Shown here piece by piece: positions 33,363-39,181 of a DNA stretch of 64,000 bases. The first letter of the stretch is position 1, and every line of letters starts with the position of its first letter. The stretch covers positions 211,103-275,102 of IMG/VR virus record IMGVR_UViG_3300048438_000153; one strand, 5' to 3'. The notes beneath the pieces were generated by a model. It worked only from the letters and a program-made list of their open reading frames with translations, did no database searches and was not told the DNA's origin. The position numbers were made by a program, and so were the translations under genes.

Positions 33363-34730
33363 ATGAGCTTCCGTTTATTTATACCCGACATTGAAGAAAT
33401 ATCAGCTCTCCTAGTCTGCTCCCACGCCTCTAGTGGGAAAACTGTCGCGATCTGTAGAAATGGGCAAGTTTTCACTAACTTATCAGCCAAGTCTACAGTC
33501 AATCAATGGACTCCTCGACACCATTTCGTACAAAAAGCATTCTTAGAGATCATTGGCGAGGGTGATGGAGGGAAGCTAGGTTGCTTTCTCGCTATTTCTC
33601 TCATCAGAAGTTTAGCCAAACACAAACATGGTGGGCATCCTGATCTTACGAGGGAAGTGCTCAGCCACCTCCCTGAAATAGAAGCTCAGATTATCTCAAG
33701 ATCGAGGGGCGCAGGAAGAAATGATCTCGTCAGCCTAGCTCAAGACTTGCCCTTTGCTGAGAGACTCGCCGATGCGGTTTTTCTATCAGGAGCGGAGTCT
33801 CATATATCCCTTGAGAAATACGAAGGTATTGGGTGTGAAGTCGTTGAGTCCGAGAGTCTATACTCTGAAGTGCGCTCAATGGGCGTGTCAGAGCAAGTCT
33901 CTCTCAAGGGCGCTATGGTAGCTCTAATCCCTAAGAGGCTATCTTCTTTCCAAGATATAGCTGAGCCCTTAGAGCTCATGGGTTCTTTCCCAAATAGACC
34001 TCTTCTGATTGTTGCCCCGATGATCAGGGGGGAAGCACTCGCCACTATTAAGAAGAACAGAGATGGTGGTGTCGTTGAAGTATACGGTGTTGAAGCCCCT
34101 CTAGTCTCATGGGGGCGCGGTTGGTTAGAGGATATCGCCTCTTTCACAGGAGGGACGCTCTACGACCCTATGGTATACTCTGAATACGGCTTAGAGATGT
34201 ACGGCTCAGCGAGAGAAGTAACTCTCAAGCCTAATGAGATCATCATAGAACCTTATGATGATCACGCTGAATGCACCGCGCAGAGAATCAGTCAGCTTCT
34301 ACATGAGGCGAGTCAGTCACCTCACGCGCACACAAGGGACTTGTGGAGAAAGAGGGCGTCCATGCTCGGAGGAACTCTTATTCGCTTGAAAGTGGGAGGG
34401 GTGACTGAAGCAGAGGGGCGCGTGAATAGGAATAAGGCAGAAAAGGCGATCACCTCTATGGGTATGATGTTACAAGGAGGTTGCGTGGAGGGTGTTATCC
34501 CAATTCTTTCAGAAATACAGGGGGTACACCCTATTGTTGACCGAGCTTTGTTAGCTCCGCTTAGAGTAGTCGCGCTCAACAACAACATCGCTAACCTAGA
34601 GAGTGCTAAATCTCTTTCTCCTCGATTAAGAGATCCATTCCCGACAGAAAGAGCTCTCTCGTTGGTTCGGAAAAGCTTTTCAGTAGCCACCACGCTTTGT
34701 TCAGTTGCTAAGATTATTAAGGGGAAGTAA
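33363..34730 (+). CDS. groEL: Divergent GroEL/Cpn60-like chaperonin
   Basis: GDGG, RPLLIVA..GEALATI..N, LEDIASFTGG, IRLKVGGVTEAE, RALLAPL, SVATTL. Confidence 0.8.
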   Translation: MSFRLFIPDIEEISALLVCSHASSGKTVAICRNGQVFTNLSAKSTVNQWTPRHHFVQKAFLEIIGEGDGGKLGCFLAISLIRSLAKHKHGGHPDLTREVLSHLPEIEAQIISRSRGAGRNDLVSLAQDLPFAERLADAVFLSGAESHISLEKYEGIGCEVVESESLYSEVRSMGVSEQVSLKGAMVALIPKRLSSFQDIAEPLELMGSFPNRPLLIVAPMIRGEALATIKKNRDGGVVEVYGVEAPLVSWGRGWLEDIASFTGGTLYDPMVYSEYGLEMYGSAREVTLKPNEIIIEPYDDHAECTAQRISQLLHEASQSPHAHTRDLWRKRASMLGGTLIRLKVGGVTEAEGRVNRNKAEKAITSMGMMLQGGCVEGVIPILSEIQGVHPIVDRALLAPLRVVALNNNIANLESAKSLSPRLRDPFPTERALSLVRKSFSVATTLCSVAKIIKGK

Positions 34731-34838
34731 ATGATAGAAATAAAGATAGATAACGGCACAGAAAGACTCAAGGGTCTAGAGGATAACTCTGTGGGCGCAA
34801 TCATCTGTGATCCTCTATGTATAAGGATTAAGAAATGA
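34731..34838 (+). pseudogene. Internally deleted duplicate of the MTase catalytic-half gene (35 aa)
   Basis: MIEIKIDNGTERLKGLEDNSVGAIICDP|LCIRIKK matches both the start (MIEIKIGDCVDRLKDLEDNSVDAIICDP) and the end (VCVGIKK) of 35152-35733. Confidence 0.8.
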
Positions 34839-35155
34839 TCATCACATTACTTAGAAAACCCTTAGAGGGGACAGTAGCTGAAAACACCCTTAAACATGGA
34901 TGTGGGGCGATTAATATAGATGCCACTAGAGTTTCTTTTGATGATAACGAAAGCATCAATTTCAAAGCCCGACAAAGACAGCAAACAGCTTCCTACAAAG
35001 AGAGCGGGTGGTCTGGTCATGTCGCGCAAGTTGGTTCTGACATACAGATGTATAAAGAAAAGGGCAGATGGCCTGCTAACTTCTTCTTAACTAGTAATAT
35101 CAAATGTGAAGGGTCAAATTTTTTTAAGCAGTTCAAGAAAGATAATGACCAATGA
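34835..35155 (+). CDS. DNA N4/N6 methyltransferase middle module
   Basis: RKPLEGTVAENTLKHGCGAINIDATRV...GRWPAN, normally internal to phage beta-class MTases. Confidence 0.75.
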   Translation: MIITLLRKPLEGTVAENTLKHGCGAINIDATRVSFDDNESINFKARQRQQTASYKESGWSGHVAQVGSDIQMYKEKGRWPANFFLTSNIKCEGSNFFKQFKKDNDQ

Positions 35156-35733
35156 TAGAAATAAAGATAGGTGATTGTGTAGATCGCCTCAAAGACCTAG
35201 AAGATAACTCAGTTGACGCAATCATCTGCGACCCTCCTTATGGACTTAAGTTTATGTCTAAAGGATGGGATGACATCGGTGACGGTAGTCAGCAGAGAGA
35301 ATGGCATAGAGCTTGGCTAACTGAAGCCCACAGAGTTCTTAAGTCAAGTGGAGTCCTCAAGGCTTTCTCAGGCACAAGGACTTTCCATCATCTGATAGCG
35401 ATGATGGAAGAAATAGGCTTCTCAGAGTTACGGGTAGAAGCATGGACTTACGGATCAGGCTTCCCAAAGTCACATAGCCTCTCGAAACAGTTTGAAAAGA
35501 GAGCGGGTGTAGAAGGTGATATAGTCGGTTACTCTAAGGGGGTTTCAGTGGAAGACTCTCAAGGCTACGGAGGGATCGGAAGAGGCGCTGTGGGTATTGT
35601 TCAGAAAGTAGTAGACTTACCTGTGAGAGCTCTCGTCACAGAAGAGGCAAAGACTTGGGAAGGTTGGGGGACTGCGCTCAAACCCTCATGGGAGCCTGTG
35701 TGTGTAGGGATTAAGAAAGAAAAACATGAGTAA
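35152..35733 (+). CDS. DNA N4/N6 methyltransferase catalytic (DPPY) module lacking SAM motif I
   Basis: GDCVDRLK..NSVDAIICDPPYG, WTYGSGFPKS, WEGWGTALKPSWEP. Confidence 0.85.
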   Translation: MIEIKIGDCVDRLKDLEDNSVDAIICDPPYGLKFMSKGWDDIGDGSQQREWHRAWLTEAHRVLKSSGVLKAFSGTRTFHHLIAMMEEIGFSELRVEAWTYGSGFPKSHSLSKQFEKRAGVEGDIVGYSKGVSVEDSQGYGGIGRGAVGIVQKVVDLPVRALVTEEAKTWEGWGTALKPSWEPVCVGIKKEKHE

Positions 35734-35944
35734 AGAGTACGAGAAAGTAGACCACCCTGACCACTATCAGAGTGAGCGCATCGAAGCCATCGACGTGATA
35801 GAGGCTTTCCGCCTCAACTTTTCTTTAGGGTCTGCGGTCAAGTACATCTTGAGAGCGGGAAAGAAACCTTCAGAGAAAGCCACTGAAGACCTCAGTAAAG
35901 CCGTTTGGTATCTACAGAGAGAAATTGAGCGCAGAAAACAATGA
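35726..35944 (+). CDS. DUF3310 (T7 gp1.7-like) protein
   Basis: VDHPDHY..IEAIDVI..FSLGSAVKYILRAGKK..EDLSKAVWYL. Confidence 0.85.
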   Translation: MSKEYEKVDHPDHYQSERIEAIDVIEAFRLNFSLGSAVKYILRAGKKPSEKATEDLSKAVWYLQREIERRKQ

Positions 35945-36417
35945 ACCCTAAGCATCTTAGAGTAAGAGTCGCTCAGTGCGATTTGATATCCTCAAACTCT
36001 CCATGCCCTCGTAGGAAAGTGGGTGCTCTTATCATTGACCCTCAGACTAATGTGGTAATCAGCGAGGGTTACAACGGCACTCCTAGAGGATCAGACAAAA
36101 GATACTGCGGTGGGGAGTATCTCTGTGAACGCGAAGAGATGGCTATCCCGAGCGGGACGAGAAACGATGTCGGATGTCACCACGCAGAAATGAACGCAAT
36201 ACTTAATGCTTCAAGGGTAGGGCAATCTACACTTGGAAAATGGCTTATCGCCAACTGCGACCCATGCCTGATGTGCGCGAAAGCGATACATCATGCTGGT
36301 ATTGAGAAACTATTCGCCCCCAACCTATCTTCGGGAGATCACATAGAGGGTCTTGAATATCTCAAGAATAATGGCATCTCACTCGAAGCACTGCCTACCA
36401 CAGAGGAAGACCCATGA
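35941..36417 (+). CDS. dCMP deaminase
   Basis: RRKVGA, GYNG.P, HAEMNAI, PCLMCAKAI. Confidence 0.92.
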   Translation: MNPKHLRVRVAQCDLISSNSPCPRRKVGALIIDPQTNVVISEGYNGTPRGSDKRYCGGEYLCEREEMAIPSGTRNDVGCHHAEMNAILNASRVGQSTLGKWLIANCDPCLMCAKAIHHAGIEKLFAPNLSSGDHIEGLEYLKNNGISLEALPTTEEDP

Positions 36418-37115
36418 AAGAAATGATCGACTATTTCCTAGCGATGATAACCCCTCCGATTGAGGACGCTTTAGTTCTCGTCTCAAAGCCTTCAGAAATA
36501 GACTATGATAAGTATCTAGACAACAGTGGGATAATCCCAACCTATAAGCCCTCTGTTCATGGATTAATATTACTTTCCGAACCCACTGAGAAAGAGGCGG
36601 AGCTTATTTTCTCAATACTTAAACCTGGCGCCCACATCGTGCTAATCCCAAGCGAAGACACCCTAATCGGACATAAGGGTGTCATAGAGTTAGAGGACAT
36701 TGGATGTGAGGTTCGAGATGCAATCTTTGTAGCAGAAGACGCTGAGAGCTTTTATTACACGTCAAAAGCGAGCCGTTCAGAAAGAGAATCGGGATTAACA
36801 CCTGAGAAAGAGGGGGCGCGAGCTAACACACATCCTACAGTGAAGCCCATTTCTATCATGGAGTGGTGCGCTAGAGACACCCCACCCAACTCCACTGTTG
36901 TAGACCCATTCTTAGGCTCGGGTACGACAGGCATTGCGATGTCTCGTTTAGGGCATTGCTTTGTGGGGATAGAGCTTCAGCCTGAGTACGCTAAAATCTG
37001 CGAGGCGCGTATTCGGTATTGGATGCCCATAGGCACTGAGGTTAACTCTGAAGCAGAGGTAGGAAAGACCGAAGAGAAAGAGGGGAGGACTCTTTCCATC
37101 TTCGACCTCTTCTAA
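36414..37115 (+). CDS. DNA methyltransferase SAM-binding module with a degenerate catalytic region
   Basis: FYYTSKASRSER, NTHPTVKP, VVDPFLGSGTTG, FVGIE; no DPPY/NPPY. Confidence 0.85.
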   Translation: MKEMIDYFLAMITPPIEDALVLVSKPSEIDYDKYLDNSGIIPTYKPSVHGLILLSEPTEKEAELIFSILKPGAHIVLIPSEDTLIGHKGVIELEDIGCEVRDAIFVAEDAESFYYTSKASRSERESGLTPEKEGARANTHPTVKPISIMEWCARDTPPNSTVVDPFLGSGTTGIAMSRLGHCFVGIELQPEYAKICEARIRYWMPIGTEVNSEAEVGKTEEKEGRTLSIFDLF

Positions 37116-37283
37116 TATCTCTCGTACCATCGCTCTGCTTTGTACTCAGGACTCTCTATTTTCACTGAGAAGAACAGAGGGAGCAGAGAGATAAAAAGTA
37201 AGAATAAAAAACACATCAAATAGCCTCCTTAGTTAGTATACACACAGTATGTGGATGTAAGACTTATCGAAAGGAGATTACAT

Positions 37284-37934
37284 ATGATACTTGGATTAGA
37301 CCCCTCTCTCCGAAACTTCGGATGGGTTCTCATGGAAGATGACGGCATCTTCTTAGACAAAGGAATGATGTCTACAGAAGCGAGCATGGTCTTCGTTGAG
37401 AGGTATGTCTTTCTCAGAGAAGGTCTGCGAGAAGTCGTTCAGAAAGTACGAGCAGATCACCCTGATAAGACGCTCAGAGTAGGTATCGAGTCACCCATCT
37501 TCAACGACCTTTACTCTGAGGGTATGTACGGACTCTTTCTCTACTCTAACGAAGCTCTCATGCTAGAGAAGTGTGACACGGTGTACTTGTCGCCCAATCA
37601 AGTCAAAGCTCACGCCGCTTCTTTCTTAAATCGACCGAAAGGGTGGAAGATGCAGAAAGGAGACATGGTGGACGCGGTTAAGGAAGCCACTGAGGGTCAG
37701 GGCGCGAAGAGGTGGAATCACCACCAAGCAGACGCTTATTGGGTCGGGCGCACTGCGGGTCGGTTTTGGCAACTGACCGAGGGTACGATCACCCGAGATG
37801 ATCTCTCAGACTTAGAGCGTAGGCAATTCACTGATTATGAGAAATATGTGCGCGGAAAGAAGGCGGGCAAGACCAAAAGGAAAGGCATAACCTACAAGGA
37901 AAACGACAGATATTTCCGTTGGTCTGAAGATTAA
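37284..37934 (+). CDS. ruvC: RuvC-like Holliday junction resolvase
   Basis: MILGLDPSLRNFG, GIESP, PNQVK, ADAY; AAGGAG RBS before ATG 37284. Confidence 0.8.
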   Translation: MILGLDPSLRNFGWVLMEDDGIFLDKGMMSTEASMVFVERYVFLREGLREVVQKVRADHPDKTLRVGIESPIFNDLYSEGMYGLFLYSNEALMLEKCDTVYLSPNQVKAHAASFLNRPKGWKMQKGDMVDAVKEATEGQGAKRWNHHQADAYWVGRTAGRFWQLTEGTITRDDLSDLERRQFTDYEKYVRGKKAGKTKRKGITYKENDRYFRWSED

Positions 37935-38017: not shown

Positions 38018-39181
38018 ATGGCTAAAGGAAAGAGAAAGACAGATTTAATGGCGGCGGCAAAAGTCGTAGCAGGCGTTTTGAAAGAGGATCATGTTGTTTC
38101 TCTCGACCCAAACAGTCTTAAAGAAAGCAGACCTCACGTTTCAACAGGGTCAGTAGCTCTCGATTATCTCATCGGGGGGAAAGAGAACGAACATGGAGTG
38201 CGCCCATGTCCAGGAATACCGAAAGGAAATATCACAAACCTTTACGGCTTGGCGGGTGCGGGAAAGACTACAATCGCGCTTCAGACTGCCGCTCAGGTGT
38301 GCGCGGAGGGCGGTACTTGTGTTTATATTGATTGGGAGCACGAAGTTGACCATAGATACGCCTCAGTCTTAGGTGTTCCTGTTTCTGACCCCTCCAAGTT
38401 TCTCCTGATTCAGCCTGATACTCTTGAGGCGGGACTGCGCTACATCTTTACCATGACTGATGCGGGAGTAGACCTCATCGTCATCGACTCTGTGGGCGCG
38501 GCTGTTCCGAAAGCCGTCTTTGAAAAGAATGACGATGGCCCTACGCCCGTAGGTCTTAACGCTCGTCTTTGGAGCACCTACCTCCCTAAGATCAAGAGTA
38601 AGATCAAATCCTCTGAGACTGCAATAATAGGCATTTCTCAGCTCCGTGAGTCCATCGGGGGAATGTCCTTCGCAGGCCCTAAGAAGATCCCTCAAGGTGG
38701 TAAGGCTTGGACGTTCTACTCGACCCTTCAGATTATGCTTCGCGTAGTCGGAAAAGAGAAAGGAAAACAGTGGGACGGTATGCAAGGAAAGGTCGTGGAA
38801 ACCGTACTCGGTACTGCGGTGAGGGCGAAGCTCGACAAGTGCAAGGTTTCTGACTCGGCGCACAAGGAAGTTGATTTCTATCTGATGTCGGGAGAAGGTG
38901 TCGATAACGTCCGTACTGTCCTTGAGCTTGGCGTTAAGACAGGCGTGGTAAGCAAGAAGGGATCTTGGTTCTCTTGGACGGGGAGTGAGGGTGAGGTTCG
39001 AGGTCAAGGTCTTAACTCTTTCAAGGATATGCTCACCGACGATCACGTCTCTCAGATTTTCGCTCAAGTTAAGCCGTTCCTCGCTGACCCGAAGAAAGCG
39101 AAGAGCGAAGAAGCGCCGAGCCTTGAGGATCTCGCAAATCTCGGAGGCGATGAGGATGACGATCTTCTAGGGGATTTGTGA
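38018..39181 (+). CDS. recA: RecA recombinase
   Basis: STGSVALD, GLAGAGKTT, YIDWEH, QPD, VIDSV, ISQLRE, GGKA..FY, KKGSWFS. Confidence 0.95.
   Translation: MAKGKRKTDLMAAAKVVAGVLKEDHVVSLDPNSLKESRPHVSTGSVALDYLIGGKENEHGVRPCPGIPKGNITNLYGLAGAGKTTIALQTAAQVCAEGGTCVYIDWEHEVDHRYASVLGVPVSDPSKFLLIQPDTLEAGLRYIFTMTDAGVDLIVIDSVGAAVPKAVFEKNDDGPTPVGLNARLWSTYLPKIKSKIKSSETAIIGISQLRESIGGMSFAGPKKIPQGGKAWTFYSTLQIMLRVVGKEKGKQWDGMQGKVVETVLGTAVRAKLDKCKVSDSAHKEVDFYLMSGEGVDNVRTVLELGVKTGVVSKKGSWFSWTGSEGEVRGQGLNSFKDMLTDDHVSQIFAQVKPFLADPKKAKSEEAPSLEDLANLGGDEDDDLLGDL

What the first reader, a model, noticed from the sequence alone, without database searches (positions are those of the whole stretch)
34731..37115. DNA methyltransferase split into three complementary, permuted genes
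Established: phage beta-class N4/N6 MTases typically run N(DPPY..GWGTALKP.EP..RKP) - M(GTVA.N...G.INID..R..GRWPAN) - C(FY..KAS..ER..HPTVKP..DPF.GSGTT) in one chain. Seen: here M (34835-35155), N (35152-35733) and C (36414-37115) are separate, ATGA-coupled ORFs in the order M-N-[DUF3310-dCMP deaminase]-C. N has DPPY but no SAM motif; C has the SAM motif plus a decayed catalytic fold without DPPY. The permuted order and clean start/stop overlaps argue against simple frameshift decay. Inference: a heteromeric MTase with exchangeable modules that could vary specificity for anti-restriction.
Basis: partly seen in the sequence, partly recalled or inferred. Interest (0 to 1): 0.75.

Follow-up and report, generated by a model that had tools for sequence, protein, structure and literature searches.

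The report
Split, modular phage DNA methyltransferase operon
A marine jumbo phage encodes one DNA methyltransferase as three separately translated, conserved proteins; its relatives carry several interchangeable copies of two of these parts next to one shared cofactor-binding part, which looks like a kit for making several methylation specificities.

Summary
M (34835-35155), N (35152-35733) and C (36414-37115) are separate ORFs in a translationally coupled operon. N carries DPPY and no SAM motif. C carries the SAM motif plus a domain with an eroded motif IV (SEPT). This is not decay. About 20 distinct related marine jumbo-phage contigs keep the same three pieces as separate ORFs with standardised ATGA junctions. 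dN/dS is 0.04-0.17. Inteins sit in the active-site motifs of N and C in some relatives. Natural M-C and N-M-C fusions exist. A three-chain model scores 0.87 against 0.13 for the best control.

Relatives hold 1-4 N and 1-4 M genes but one C. N and M each have a hypervariable segment, in at least 10 and about 18 discrete types, at the position of the class-beta target-recognition domain.

The M-N order is not a designed permutation. An about 99%-identical strain has N-M. ORF 34731-34838 is the relic of a deleted second N.

Best reading: a heteromeric class-beta, probably N6-adenine, DNA methyltransferase with exchangeable specificity modules and a shared SAM-binding subunit. Activity, target and anti-restriction role are untested. 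I found no published description.

The parts
33363..34730 (+). Upstream gene of the operon: divergent GroEL-like chaperonin (455 aa). It marks the 5' border of the module array in relatives.
   Evidence: phrog_5725 chaperonin GroEL, E = 1e-19. tblastn matches phage GroEL genes. No Pfam hit at E < 0.1. It lies directly upstream of the array in most related loci.
34731..34838 (+). 'Head' mini-ORF (35 aa): relic of a second N gene with an in-frame internal deletion. It keeps the ATG and the ATGA coupling to M.
   Evidence: 34730-34815 is 78% identical to the 5' end of N (35151-35236). 34806-34835 is 80% identical to the 3' end of N (35689-35718). It has substitutions at positions that are invariant in 31 N homologs (G7D, C9G, D22G). 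It is absent from all other relatives and from the strain in run X9.
34835..35155 (+). M subunit (106 aa, short 'M1' type): the insert or target-recognition module. Conserved parts are an N-terminal strand and helix (MIITLLRKPLEGTVAENTLKHGCGAINID), GRWPAN (35063-35080) and an FFKQFKK tail, around one hypervariable segment.
   Evidence: Aligns to the middle of single-chain homologs and to phrog_3008 positions 3-81. 39 homologs all start at the same Met. dN/dS is 0.07-0.17. The same short form occurs in L042 and L044, and fused to C in P0073.
35152..35733 (+). N subunit (193 aa, type 'Na'): the catalytic half of a class-beta amino-methyltransferase. It has motif IV DPPY at 35230-35241, a hypervariable segment at about residues 106-165 (35467-35646), and a conserved WEGWGTALKPSWEP strand. 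It has no SAM-binding motif. Its last residues, from 35713, derive from an M tail.
   Evidence: PF01555 positions 1-99. Matches M.RsrI and CcrM N-terminal halves. DPPY is invariant in 31 homologs. dN/dS is 0.04-0.05. The run X9 contig joins an M 3' part to 35713.
35726..35944 (+). DUF3310 protein (72 aa). It sits inside the array and is not a methyltransferase part.
   Evidence: PF11753, E = 2e-15. It sits at different places in the arrays of relatives.
35941..36417 (+). dCMP or cytidine deaminase (158 aa). It sits inside the array and is not a methyltransferase part.
   Evidence: PF00383, E = 2e-19. It sits at different places in the arrays of relatives.
36414..37115 (+). C subunit (233 aa). 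The N-terminal alpha/beta domain has an eroded motif IV (SEPT, 36576-36587). It is followed by FYYTSKASRSER, motif X HPTVKP (36831-36848), and motif I VVDPFLGSGTTG (36897-36932), which together form the SAM-binding half. One copy was found in each related array examined.
   Evidence: PF01555 positions 146-219. In fused relatives the same region matches profile positions 33-219. Matches the C-terminal halves of DpnA, CcrM, M.BceJIV and MboIIA. Conserved over its full length in 21 homologs. More than 120 clusters exist in metagenomes.

Best explanation
The three ORFs encode the subunits of one heteromeric class-beta, probably N6-adenine, DNA methyltransferase. They are made as separate polypeptides by translational coupling.

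Roles of the subunits:
- N supplies the catalytic half of the Rossmann fold (strands beta4-beta7 with DPPY) and a variable loop.
- C supplies the SAM-binding half (motifs X, I, II). It also has an N-terminal scaffold domain derived from a second catalytic half whose motif IV has eroded.
- M supplies the inserted target-recognition module. Its N-terminal strand probably docks on C's scaffold domain.
- The active site forms at the N/C interface.

Wider pattern (inferred): in this clade of uncultured marine jumbo phages the constant C subunit is shared by one to four alternative N and one to four alternative M subunits. The hypervariable segments of N and M lie where class-beta enzymes read DNA. 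An array would therefore yield several methylation specificities, which would plausibly protect the phage genome from host restriction.

Module ends are standardised: the same 5' and 3' sequences, ATGA junctions, and a Shine-Dalgarno-like GGAG inside the upstream tail. They recombine, which shuffles modules within and between genomes.

This window holds the minimal set of one M, one N and one C, plus the relic of a deleted second N.

Shown: gene structure, conservation, purifying selection, module diversity, and strain-level rearrangement. Inferred: complex formation, its topology, methylation of DNA, and multi-specificity.
For: Separate ORFs with -4 junctions (98) or -1 junctions (14) in about 20 distinct arrays. 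Junction sequences and start codons are conserved, and every M starts MII and every N starts MIEIK.

dN/dS is 0.04-0.17 for N, M and C.

Inteins sit exactly in YG|SGFPKS of N (L042, L047) and HP|TVKP of C (L043), which implies translated proteins whose motifs matter.

Rosetta-stone fusions exist in three forms:
- single-chain N-M-Ctail in mycobacteriophage, Proteus, Klebsiella and Rhodobacter phages;
- M-C fusions (L021, P0021, P0059, P0073, P0086, P0104);
- N-M-C in L047.

Structure predictions: complex prediction gives ipSAE 0.87 (three runs: 0.86-0.88) against a best control of 0.13. That mark was reached by 58 of 80 solved complexes and 2 of 110 mismatched pairs. The interface includes N 20-29 and C 160-168. 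The SAM half of C is poorly placed without N, with pLDDT 27-57 in the M-C fusion and 37-65 in C alone. C's N-terminal domain and M's first strand are confident.

Hypervariable cassettes: N has at least 10 types (74% identity within a type, 17% between types) on a scaffold that is 76-85% identical. M has about 18 types.

Single polypeptides with one N, two to four M domains and one C tail exist (P0121, P0122, P0125).

Split N genes form one clade (support 100/100) apart from 13 fused homologs.

A strain in run X9 that is about 99% identical in the flanks has the order N-M and no relic.

Within-genome N paralogs share extra synonymous identity at their 5' ends, 0.78 against 0.55 between genomes.
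Against: - No biochemical or methylome evidence exists. No RNA run holds this sequence.
- The complex score may reflect the model's memory of intact methyltransferase folds. It shows that the pieces can rebuild the fold, not that they bind (caveat stated).
- Contact pairs were not available, so beta1/beta4 pairing is inferred from interface lists.
- C has its own pseudo-catalytic half, which could in principle occupy the position proposed for N.
- N and M numbers are unequal and N-M adjacency is not fixed, so stoichiometry and the rule of assembly are unknown.
- Some class-beta relatives act on RNA (10.1101/2023.09.20.558713), so DNA as the substrate is assumed.
Confidence: 0.75

Rival explanations
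1. The pieces are the decaying remains of one or more broken methyltransferase genes (frameshifts and deletions) with no function.
For: One true relic is present: the 35-aa ORF 34731-34838 has lost invariant residues. N's tail is a recombinant junction. Tandem full-length paralogs exist in other huge phages and could be a starting point for decay.
Against: The break points are the same in about 20 diverged genomes. dN/dS is 0.04-0.17 with saturated dS. Motifs are invariant. Inteins are maintained in frame. More than 120 C clusters and about 55 stand-alone M clusters are seen among the top hits.
Confidence: 0.03
2. A single polypeptide is made from the overlapping ORFs by programmed frameshifting or reinitiation-fusion at the ATGA junctions, so the enzyme is not really heteromeric.
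For: All junctions are 4-nt or 1-nt overlaps. Fused forms occur naturally.
Against: No slippery heptamer is seen at the junctions, and a GGAG-like ribosome-binding site precedes most starts. Both sides of each junction keep their own copy of the boundary strand (N ends EPICIGVKK, M starts MIITLLRKP; M ends FFKQFKK, C has FYYTSKA), so a fusion would duplicate it. In this window N is followed by DUF3310 and a deaminase, not by M or C. The gene order varies between genomes.
Confidence: 0.03
3. The pieces act separately or in sub-complexes with other roles. For example, M + C could be a SAM-binding or DNA-binding pseudo-enzyme, and N an independent factor or a partner of another SAM-binding half in the genome.
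For: M-C fusions without N are frequent. The M-C model is confident for M's first strand plus C's N-terminal domain. A 96-aa ORF that holds only a SAM-binding half lies elsewhere in the genome. Heterodimeric class-beta enzymes with an eroded-motif-IV partner are known (PMC7544214).
Against: N has no SAM-binding motifs and C has no catalytic motif or recognition domain. Only together do they hold the full motif set found in single-chain homologs. N was the scored partner in the complex model, and replacing C dropped the score to 0.13. N always co-occurs with C in the arrays.
Confidence: 0.08
4. The complex forms as proposed, but its substrate is RNA or another nucleic-acid form rather than phage double-stranded DNA, so it is not an anti-restriction device.
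For: A prophage class-beta enzyme annotated as a DNA adenine methyltransferase was reported to methylate 16S rRNA with a partner subunit (10.1101/2023.09.20.558713). No methylome data exist for this phage.
Against: The closest solved and annotated relatives are DNA methyltransferases (M.RsrI, CcrM, DpnA, M.BceJIV). Discrete hypervariable cassettes and multi-copy arrays fit varying DNA sequence specificity better than a fixed RNA target.
Confidence: 0.1

Closest known systems
Single-chain phage class-beta methyltransferases with the GTVA..N.L..G.G..NID / GRWP.N insert (for example Mycobacterium phage Murica gp102, Quico gp82, Aeneas gp62, and Proteus phage RS10pmA ORF53)
   Same: They are homologous over N, M and the C tail, in the order N-M-Ctail, with DPPY, HPTVKP and FxGSGTT motifs.
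   Different: They are one polypeptide. They have no second (pseudo) catalytic half before the C tail, only one copy of each boundary strand, and no module arrays. The split N genes form a separate clade.
Natural two-subunit C5 DNA methyltransferases M.AquI and M.EcoHK31I
   Same: The conserved motifs of one methyltransferase fold are divided between separately encoded polypeptides that must assemble (PMC3404938).
   Different: Those are C5-cytosine enzymes split in two, with one copy of each part. Here a class-beta amino-methyltransferase is split in three, the break lies between the catalytic and SAM-binding halves, and relatives hold alternative copies of two parts.
Multispecific C5 methyltransferases of temperate Bacillus subtilis phages (Behrens et al. 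1987, listed as reference 20 in PMC4081073)
   Same: From my own knowledge, they work alike: several target-recognising domains served by one catalytic core give a phage several specificities. Fused relatives here have one N, two to four M and one C tail.
   Different: They belong to a different enzyme class. Their recognition domains lie in tandem inside one protein. Here the modules are mostly separate genes, and the catalytic half is also multiplied.
Heterodimeric class-beta enzymes with an eroded-motif-IV partner (MettL3-MettL14, MTA1-MTA9), and the 'division of labour' dimers (M.EcoP15I, CcrM)
   Same: One active motif IV (DPPY in N) is paired with a related domain whose motif IV is eroded. 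It reads SEPT in C, compared with EPPL in MettL14 (PMC7544214).
   Different: In those pairs both partners are complete folds. Here the eroded half is fused to the only SAM-binding half, and the active half has none.
Split genes of T4-like phages (Aeh1 nrdA, phage 25 gene 43, T4 topoisomerase)
   Same: Phage enzymes are split into separately translated pieces that reassemble into an active enzyme (PMC2988022).
   Different: Those splits are linked to homing-endonuclease or spacer insertions and give one copy of each piece. Here the junctions are direct ATGA overlaps and the pieces are multiplied and shuffled.

Membership tests
Class-beta amino DNA methyltransferase (Pfam PF01555 N6_N4_Mtase) | Motif order IV ... 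X, I (catalytic half before SAM-binding half) | tested here: met
   N matches profile positions 1-99 and C matches 146-219. The order in fused homologs is N-M-Ctail. In this window the halves lie on different polypeptides.
Class-beta amino DNA methyltransferase (Pfam PF01555 N6_N4_Mtase) | Catalytic motif IV (D/N/S)PP(Y/F/W) | tested here: met
   DPPY at N residues 27-30, invariant in 31 homologs. The corresponding place in C reads SEPT.
Class-beta amino DNA methyltransferase (Pfam PF01555 N6_N4_Mtase) | SAM-binding motif I FxGxG, preceded by motif X | tested here: met
   HPTVKP and VVDPFLGSGTTG in C are invariant in 21 homologs. Both are absent from N and M.
Class-beta amino DNA methyltransferase (Pfam PF01555 N6_N4_Mtase) | All motifs in one polypeptide | tested here: not met
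   Three ORFs lie in three frames, reproduced in independent assemblies and in relatives.
Class-beta amino DNA methyltransferase (Pfam PF01555 N6_N4_Mtase) | SAM-dependent methylation of adenine N6 or cytosine N4 in DNA | not testable with these tools
   This needs expression and methylome analysis. DPPY, rather than SPPY/F, suggests adenine (inference).
Natural split (multi-subunit) DNA methyltransferases of the M.AquI / M.EcoHK31I kind | Essential motifs divided between separately encoded polypeptides | tested here: met
   The family description is taken from PMC3404938.
Natural split (multi-subunit) DNA methyltransferases of the M.AquI / M.EcoHK31I kind | C5-cytosine methyltransferase fold (motifs I-X with the PC and ENV motifs) | tested here: not met
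   The only Pfam matches are PF01555, plus a weaker PF01170 match on N. The PDB matches are class-beta amino-methyltransferases.
Natural split (multi-subunit) DNA methyltransferases of the M.AquI / M.EcoHK31I kind | Activity requires all subunits together | not testable with these tools
   Only a prediction is available: ipSAE 0.87 against a best control of 0.13.
Multispecific phage methyltransferases (several recognition modules, one core) | More than one alternative recognition module served by one SAM-binding or catalytic core | tested here: inconclusive
   This window has one N, one M and one C, and no further copies lie elsewhere in the genome. Relatives have 1-4 N and 1-4 M with one C, and fused proteins carry 2-4 M. 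Whether each module gives a distinct specificity is untested.
Pseudogene / frameshift decay | Relaxed selection and non-conserved break points | tested here: not met
   For M, N and C, dN/dS is 0.04-0.17 and the boundaries are conserved. For the 35-aa ORF 34731-34838 alone the feature is met: it has an internal deletion and has lost invariant residues.

The most novel reading that the evidence does not exclude
A clade of marine jumbo phages runs a combinatorial methyltransferase kit. A single SAM-binding subunit (C) assembles with any of several catalytic-half subunits (N) and any of several recognition subunits (M), and each of these carries a discrete hypervariable cassette. An array of n N genes and m M genes would then yield up to n x m sequence specificities. 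Standardised ATGA junctions and conserved module ends let recombination swap modules between strains. This would be a phage counterpart of Type I HsdS shuffling, and the first natural class-beta enzyme whose Rossmann fold is completed in trans.
Probability: 0.4. Interest if true: 0.9.

Novelty: new variant of a known kind. Interest (0 to 1): 0.78.

Why it matters
If the subunits assemble as proposed, this is a natural amino-methyltransferase whose catalytic and cofactor-binding halves are separate proteins, with the cofactor half shared among alternative partners. Three consequences would follow.
- It would be a simple, testable system for how class-beta enzymes divide recognition and catalysis.
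- It would explain how large phages with broad or changing hosts can keep many methylation specificities at low coding cost.
- It would offer naturally orthogonal split parts for programmable DNA methylation, a goal pursued so far with artificially bisected C5 enzymes (PMC3404938, PMC2836561).

The family is abundant in ocean metagenomes. There are more than 120 C clusters, and 14,789 representative proteins carry an M-like domain. Sources annotate them only as 'hypothetical protein' or 'DNA methylase'.

Tried and rejected
- blastn of the region against 50,697 phage records found nothing. The phage has no cultured close relative.
- The promoter and terminator scan was uninformative: promoter-like sites were fewer than in shuffles, and the terminator-like hits lay inside genes.
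- C folded alone gave a poor model (pLDDT 62). Foldseek matches to small class-beta enzymes had TM scores of only 0.2-0.3. This suggests topology but is not proof.
- VIA alignment of the M-C fusion model gave only partial matches (Z 5-8), too weak to fix the role of C's N-terminal domain.
- An alignment meant to model the natural N-M-C fusion of L047 came out misaligned, with N rows placed on the wrong half. I dropped it, so the fused protein was not modelled.
- No RNA run holds the sequence, so expression is unverified.
- I first suspected that four N-like Pfam hits at genome 101-109 kb were further split halves. They are complete enzymes with motif I before SPPY.
- The Stx-prophage two-subunit methyltransferase is a complete enzyme plus an accessory protein, not a split fold.
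- Seven literature searches found no description of a split class-beta phage enzyme. The library holds open-access papers only.
Full report
**Where the window lies.** The window is the last 64 kb of a 275-kb IMG/VR virus record, estimated 88% complete and 47% G+C. Near-identical sequence is held by at least 20 seawater or marine metagenome runs from many studies. The nearest deposited genome is an unannotated 485-kb 'uncultured phage', LR745208.1, whose RecA is 50% identical. This is therefore an uncultured marine jumbo phage.

**Checking the observation.**
- A GroEL-like gene (33363-34730; phrog_5725) is followed without a gap by seven tightly coupled ORFs.
- These are a 35-aa ORF (34731-34838), M (34835-35155), N (35152-35733), DUF3310 (35726-35944), a dCMP deaminase (35941-36417) and C (36414-37115). 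The junctions are ATGA overlaps, or 8 nt for N/DUF3310.
- A RuvC-like gene (37251-37934; phrog_159) and a RecA-like gene (38018-39181) follow.

Pfam's N6_N4_Mtase profile matches N at positions 1-99 and C at positions 146-219. M has no Pfam hit.

Against the single-chain methyltransferases of phages Murica, Quico and RS10pmA, the pieces align as follows:
- N aligns to the N-terminal part, M to the middle insert, and C residues 113-214 to the C-terminal part.
- C residues 63-104 align weakly to the segment that follows DPPY.

N has DPPY (residues 27-30) and no motif I. C has HPTVKP and FLGSGTT, and reads SEPT where motif IV would be. PDB sequence searches give class-beta enzymes: M.RsrI and CcrM for N; DpnA/M1.HpyAVI, CcrM, M.BceJIV, MboIIA and PvuII for C.

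Contigs from three other seawater runs reproduce the arrangement with 0-1 differences.

The 35-aa ORF at 34731-34838 is a second N gene with an in-frame internal deletion.
- Its first 84 nt match the 5' end of N (78%) and its last 30 nt match the 3' end of N (80%). The two matches overlap in a short shared stretch (34806-34815).
- It has substitutions at G7, C9 and D22, which are invariant in 31 N homologs.
- It occurs only in this genotype.
It is a relic that still passes translational coupling on to M.

**Conservation of the split.** Searches of IMG/VR with N and C returned about 50 loci. Between the GroEL-like gene and the RuvC/RecA genes, about 20 distinct arrays carry N (180-199 aa), M (103-225 aa) and C (219-273 aa) as separate ORFs in different frames.
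- Of the junctions, 98 are -4 overlaps and 14 are -1.
- Every N begins ATGATAGAAAT (MIEIK), and every M begins ATGATCATCAC (MIIT).
- N tails end ...GGAGTTAAGAA|ATGA, with a GGAG-like ribosome-binding site. M tails end ...TTTAAGAAAGAnAATGAnCA|ATGA.
- Against orthologs of 70-88% amino-acid identity, dN/dS is 0.04-0.05 for N, 0.07-0.17 for M and 0.10-0.15 for C. Synonymous sites are saturated or nearly so.
- In L042 and L047 an intein interrupts N exactly at YG|SGFPKS. In L043 an intein with Hint and LAGLIDADG domains interrupts C at HP|TVKP. In-frame inteins in active-site motifs imply proteins that are translated and needed.
- In a maximum-likelihood tree of the N region, all 31 split N genes form one group (support 100/100) apart from 13 single-chain homologs. 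The N-M-C fusion of L047 nests inside the split group, so it is a secondary re-fusion.
The 'would refute' condition of the finding, relaxed selection or stops in relatives, is not met.

**Evidence that the pieces work together.**
- Only together do they carry the motif set of the single-chain enzymes.
- Natural fusions link them. M-C fusions of 325-480 aa recur (L021, P0021, P0059, P0086, P0104), as does P0073, in which the window's short M type is fused to C. L047 has N-M-C in one frame and retains both copies of each boundary strand.
- The three-chain prediction (C, M, N with family alignments) scored ipSAE 0.86-0.88 in three runs. The controls scored 0.00, 0.00 and 0.13. In the tool's calibration this mark was reached by 58 of 80 solved complexes and 2 of 110 mismatched pairs.
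- The confident interface includes N 1-29 (beta4 and DPPY) and C 144-214 (motif X, beta1/motif I, beta2). C residues 1-83 are almost absent from it. The tool warns that such a pass can come from memory of intact folds. It shows that the pieces can rebuild a methyltransferase fold, not that they bind.
- Without N, the SAM-binding half is not placed. Its pLDDT is 37-65 in C alone and 27-57 in the M-C fusion P0073. In the same fusion model, M's first strand and helix (69-79) and C's N-terminal domain (74-95) are confident.
- VIA alignment matched residues 259-332 of that model to SAM-binding halves (Z 8.1; M.RsrI 214-304). It matched residues 99-211 to a Rossmann-like half (Z about 6).

My reading is partly inferred. 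N plus the C-terminal half of C form the catalytic Rossmann fold. C's N-terminal domain is a former catalytic half with eroded motif IV that now acts as a scaffold, and M's N-terminal strand docks on it. This recalls class-beta dimers with division of labour and partners with eroded motif IV, such as MettL14 with EPPL (PMC7544214).

**Modularity.** Each related array examined has one C, at its 3' end, but 1-4 N and 1-4 M, in varying order. Examples:
- N M C (L036)
- M N M C (L017)
- N M N C (L016)
- N M M N M M C (L044)
- M N M N N M N deaminase C (L019)

N is 76-85% identical outside residues 106-165. That segment falls into at least 10 discrete types, with 74% identity within a type and 17% between types. 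M has about 18 types of its first variable segment, plus an optional Cys-rich insert and a second variable segment. Both variable parts lie between the motif VIII region and motif X, where class-beta enzymes carry the target-recognition domain (my own knowledge; alignment ranges to CcrM).

N-M adjacency is not fixed. The window's N type is followed by five different M types in relatives. N paralogs of one genome share more synonymous identity in their first 32 codons than N genes of different genomes (0.78 against 0.55). This points to gene conversion at module ends.

The M profile finds 14,789 representative proteins (1,280 at E <= 1e-30). Among the best 150, about 55 are stand-alone M proteins. 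Many of the others are single chains with one N, two to four M domains and one C tail, or M-M-M-C. Those resemble multispecific phage methyltransferases with tandem recognition domains (Behrens 1987, listed in PMC4081073).

C-type proteins form more than 120 clusters. All are metagenomic, on contigs up to 375 kb, and are named 'hypothetical protein' or 'DNA modification methylase'. Two published huge-phage genomes carry the fused form, one of them four in tandem. That is a plausible precursor state.

**The 'permuted' order.** The order M-N is not a structural permutation. In run X9 a contig whose flanks are about 99% identical runs from the GroEL-like gene into N (97% identical). It continues into an M of the same type but longer (86% identical over the shared part), and then into the window again from 35713 on. 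It has no relic.
- The last residues of the window's N (GIKK|EKHE) are therefore an N tail joined to an M tail, which means a downstream M was deleted.
- The upstream relic and the short M come from another N-M pair.
- All break points lie in the conserved module ends.
- The window genome has no further N or M elsewhere. It holds the minimal set.

**Comparison with what is known.**
- Natural split DNA methyltransferases are known for C5 enzymes. M.AquI and M.EcoHK31I each have two polypeptides (PMC3404938).
- Split phage enzymes that reassemble are known for RNR, DNA polymerase and topoisomerase (PMC2988022).
- PHROGs holds a 192-position family that matches N alone (phrog_6025). It also holds a 244-position family that matches M plus the C tail (phrog_3008). 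Two-piece forms may therefore already sit unremarked in sequenced phages. I did not inspect their members.
- Seven full-text searches found no description of a split class-beta enzyme, of a shared SAM-binding subunit, or of such arrays.
I file this as a new variant of a known kind.

**Limits.**
- There are no activity, methylome, transcript or protein data.
- The topology of the complex is inferred from interface lists and confidence patterns.
- DNA as the substrate, adenine as the target and anti-restriction as the purpose are inferences.

Noticed in passing
window 34731-34838: 35-aa ORF that is an N gene with an in-frame internal deletion. The break lies at a short stretch shared by both ends. 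It has lost residues that are invariant in N, but keeps its start codon and the ATGA overlap with M.
   Followed up: yes
window 34729-35713 (run X9): A marine strain whose flanks are about 99% identical has the order N then M (a longer allele, 86% identical) and no relic. Module order and content therefore differ between near-identical strains. The break points lie in conserved module ends.
   Followed up: partly
L042:6001-7767, L047:6585-8495, L043:7842-9758: Inteins lie in relatives' N (inserted at YG|SGFPKS) and C (inserted at HP|TVKP, with Hint and LAGLIDADG domains). They sit exactly in active-site motifs of the split subunits.
   Followed up: partly
P0121, P0122, P0125, P0073, L021:6567-8000, L047:9481-11214: Natural fusions occur in many combinations (M-C, M-M-M-C, N-M-M-Ctail, N-M-C). 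Several proteins carry two to four M domains in one chain.
   Followed up: partly
own genome G000:C1:146987-147277 (- strand; outside the window): A 96-aa ORF consists only of a class-beta SAM-binding half (motif X-like HSATFP plus DPFLGSGTT; 84 bits to PF01555 positions 142-221). No catalytic half lies next to it, and its partner, if any, is unknown.
   Followed up: no
own genome G000:C1:101161-109364 (outside the window): Four paralogous proteins of about 400 aa with motif I followed by SPPY look like complete methyltransferases of another class. A Dam-like gene lies at 102278-103066. The phage therefore carries many methyltransferases.
   Followed up: partly
window 35726-36417 and related loci: The DUF3310 gene and the dCMP deaminase gene sit inside the module array, but at different positions in different genomes: before the array, between N genes, or just before C.
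   Followed up: no
window 33363-34730: The 455-aa GroEL-like protein is so divergent that no Pfam model matches it at E < 0.1. Only PHROGs and tblastn to phage GroEL genes recognise residues of about 176-390.
   Followed up: no
L067 (LR756508.1 283436-288760): A published 484-kb huge-phage genome has four tandem methyltransferase genes of the same family. Two are complete N-M-Ctail. One has an interrupted N plus a C tail without M. One lacks the C tail.
   Followed up: no
PHROGs phrog_6025 and phrog_3008: The profile lengths and match ranges suggest families of N-only (192 positions) and M + C-tail (244 positions) proteins among sequenced phages. This would be a two-piece version of the same split. 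Members were not inspected.
   Followed up: no
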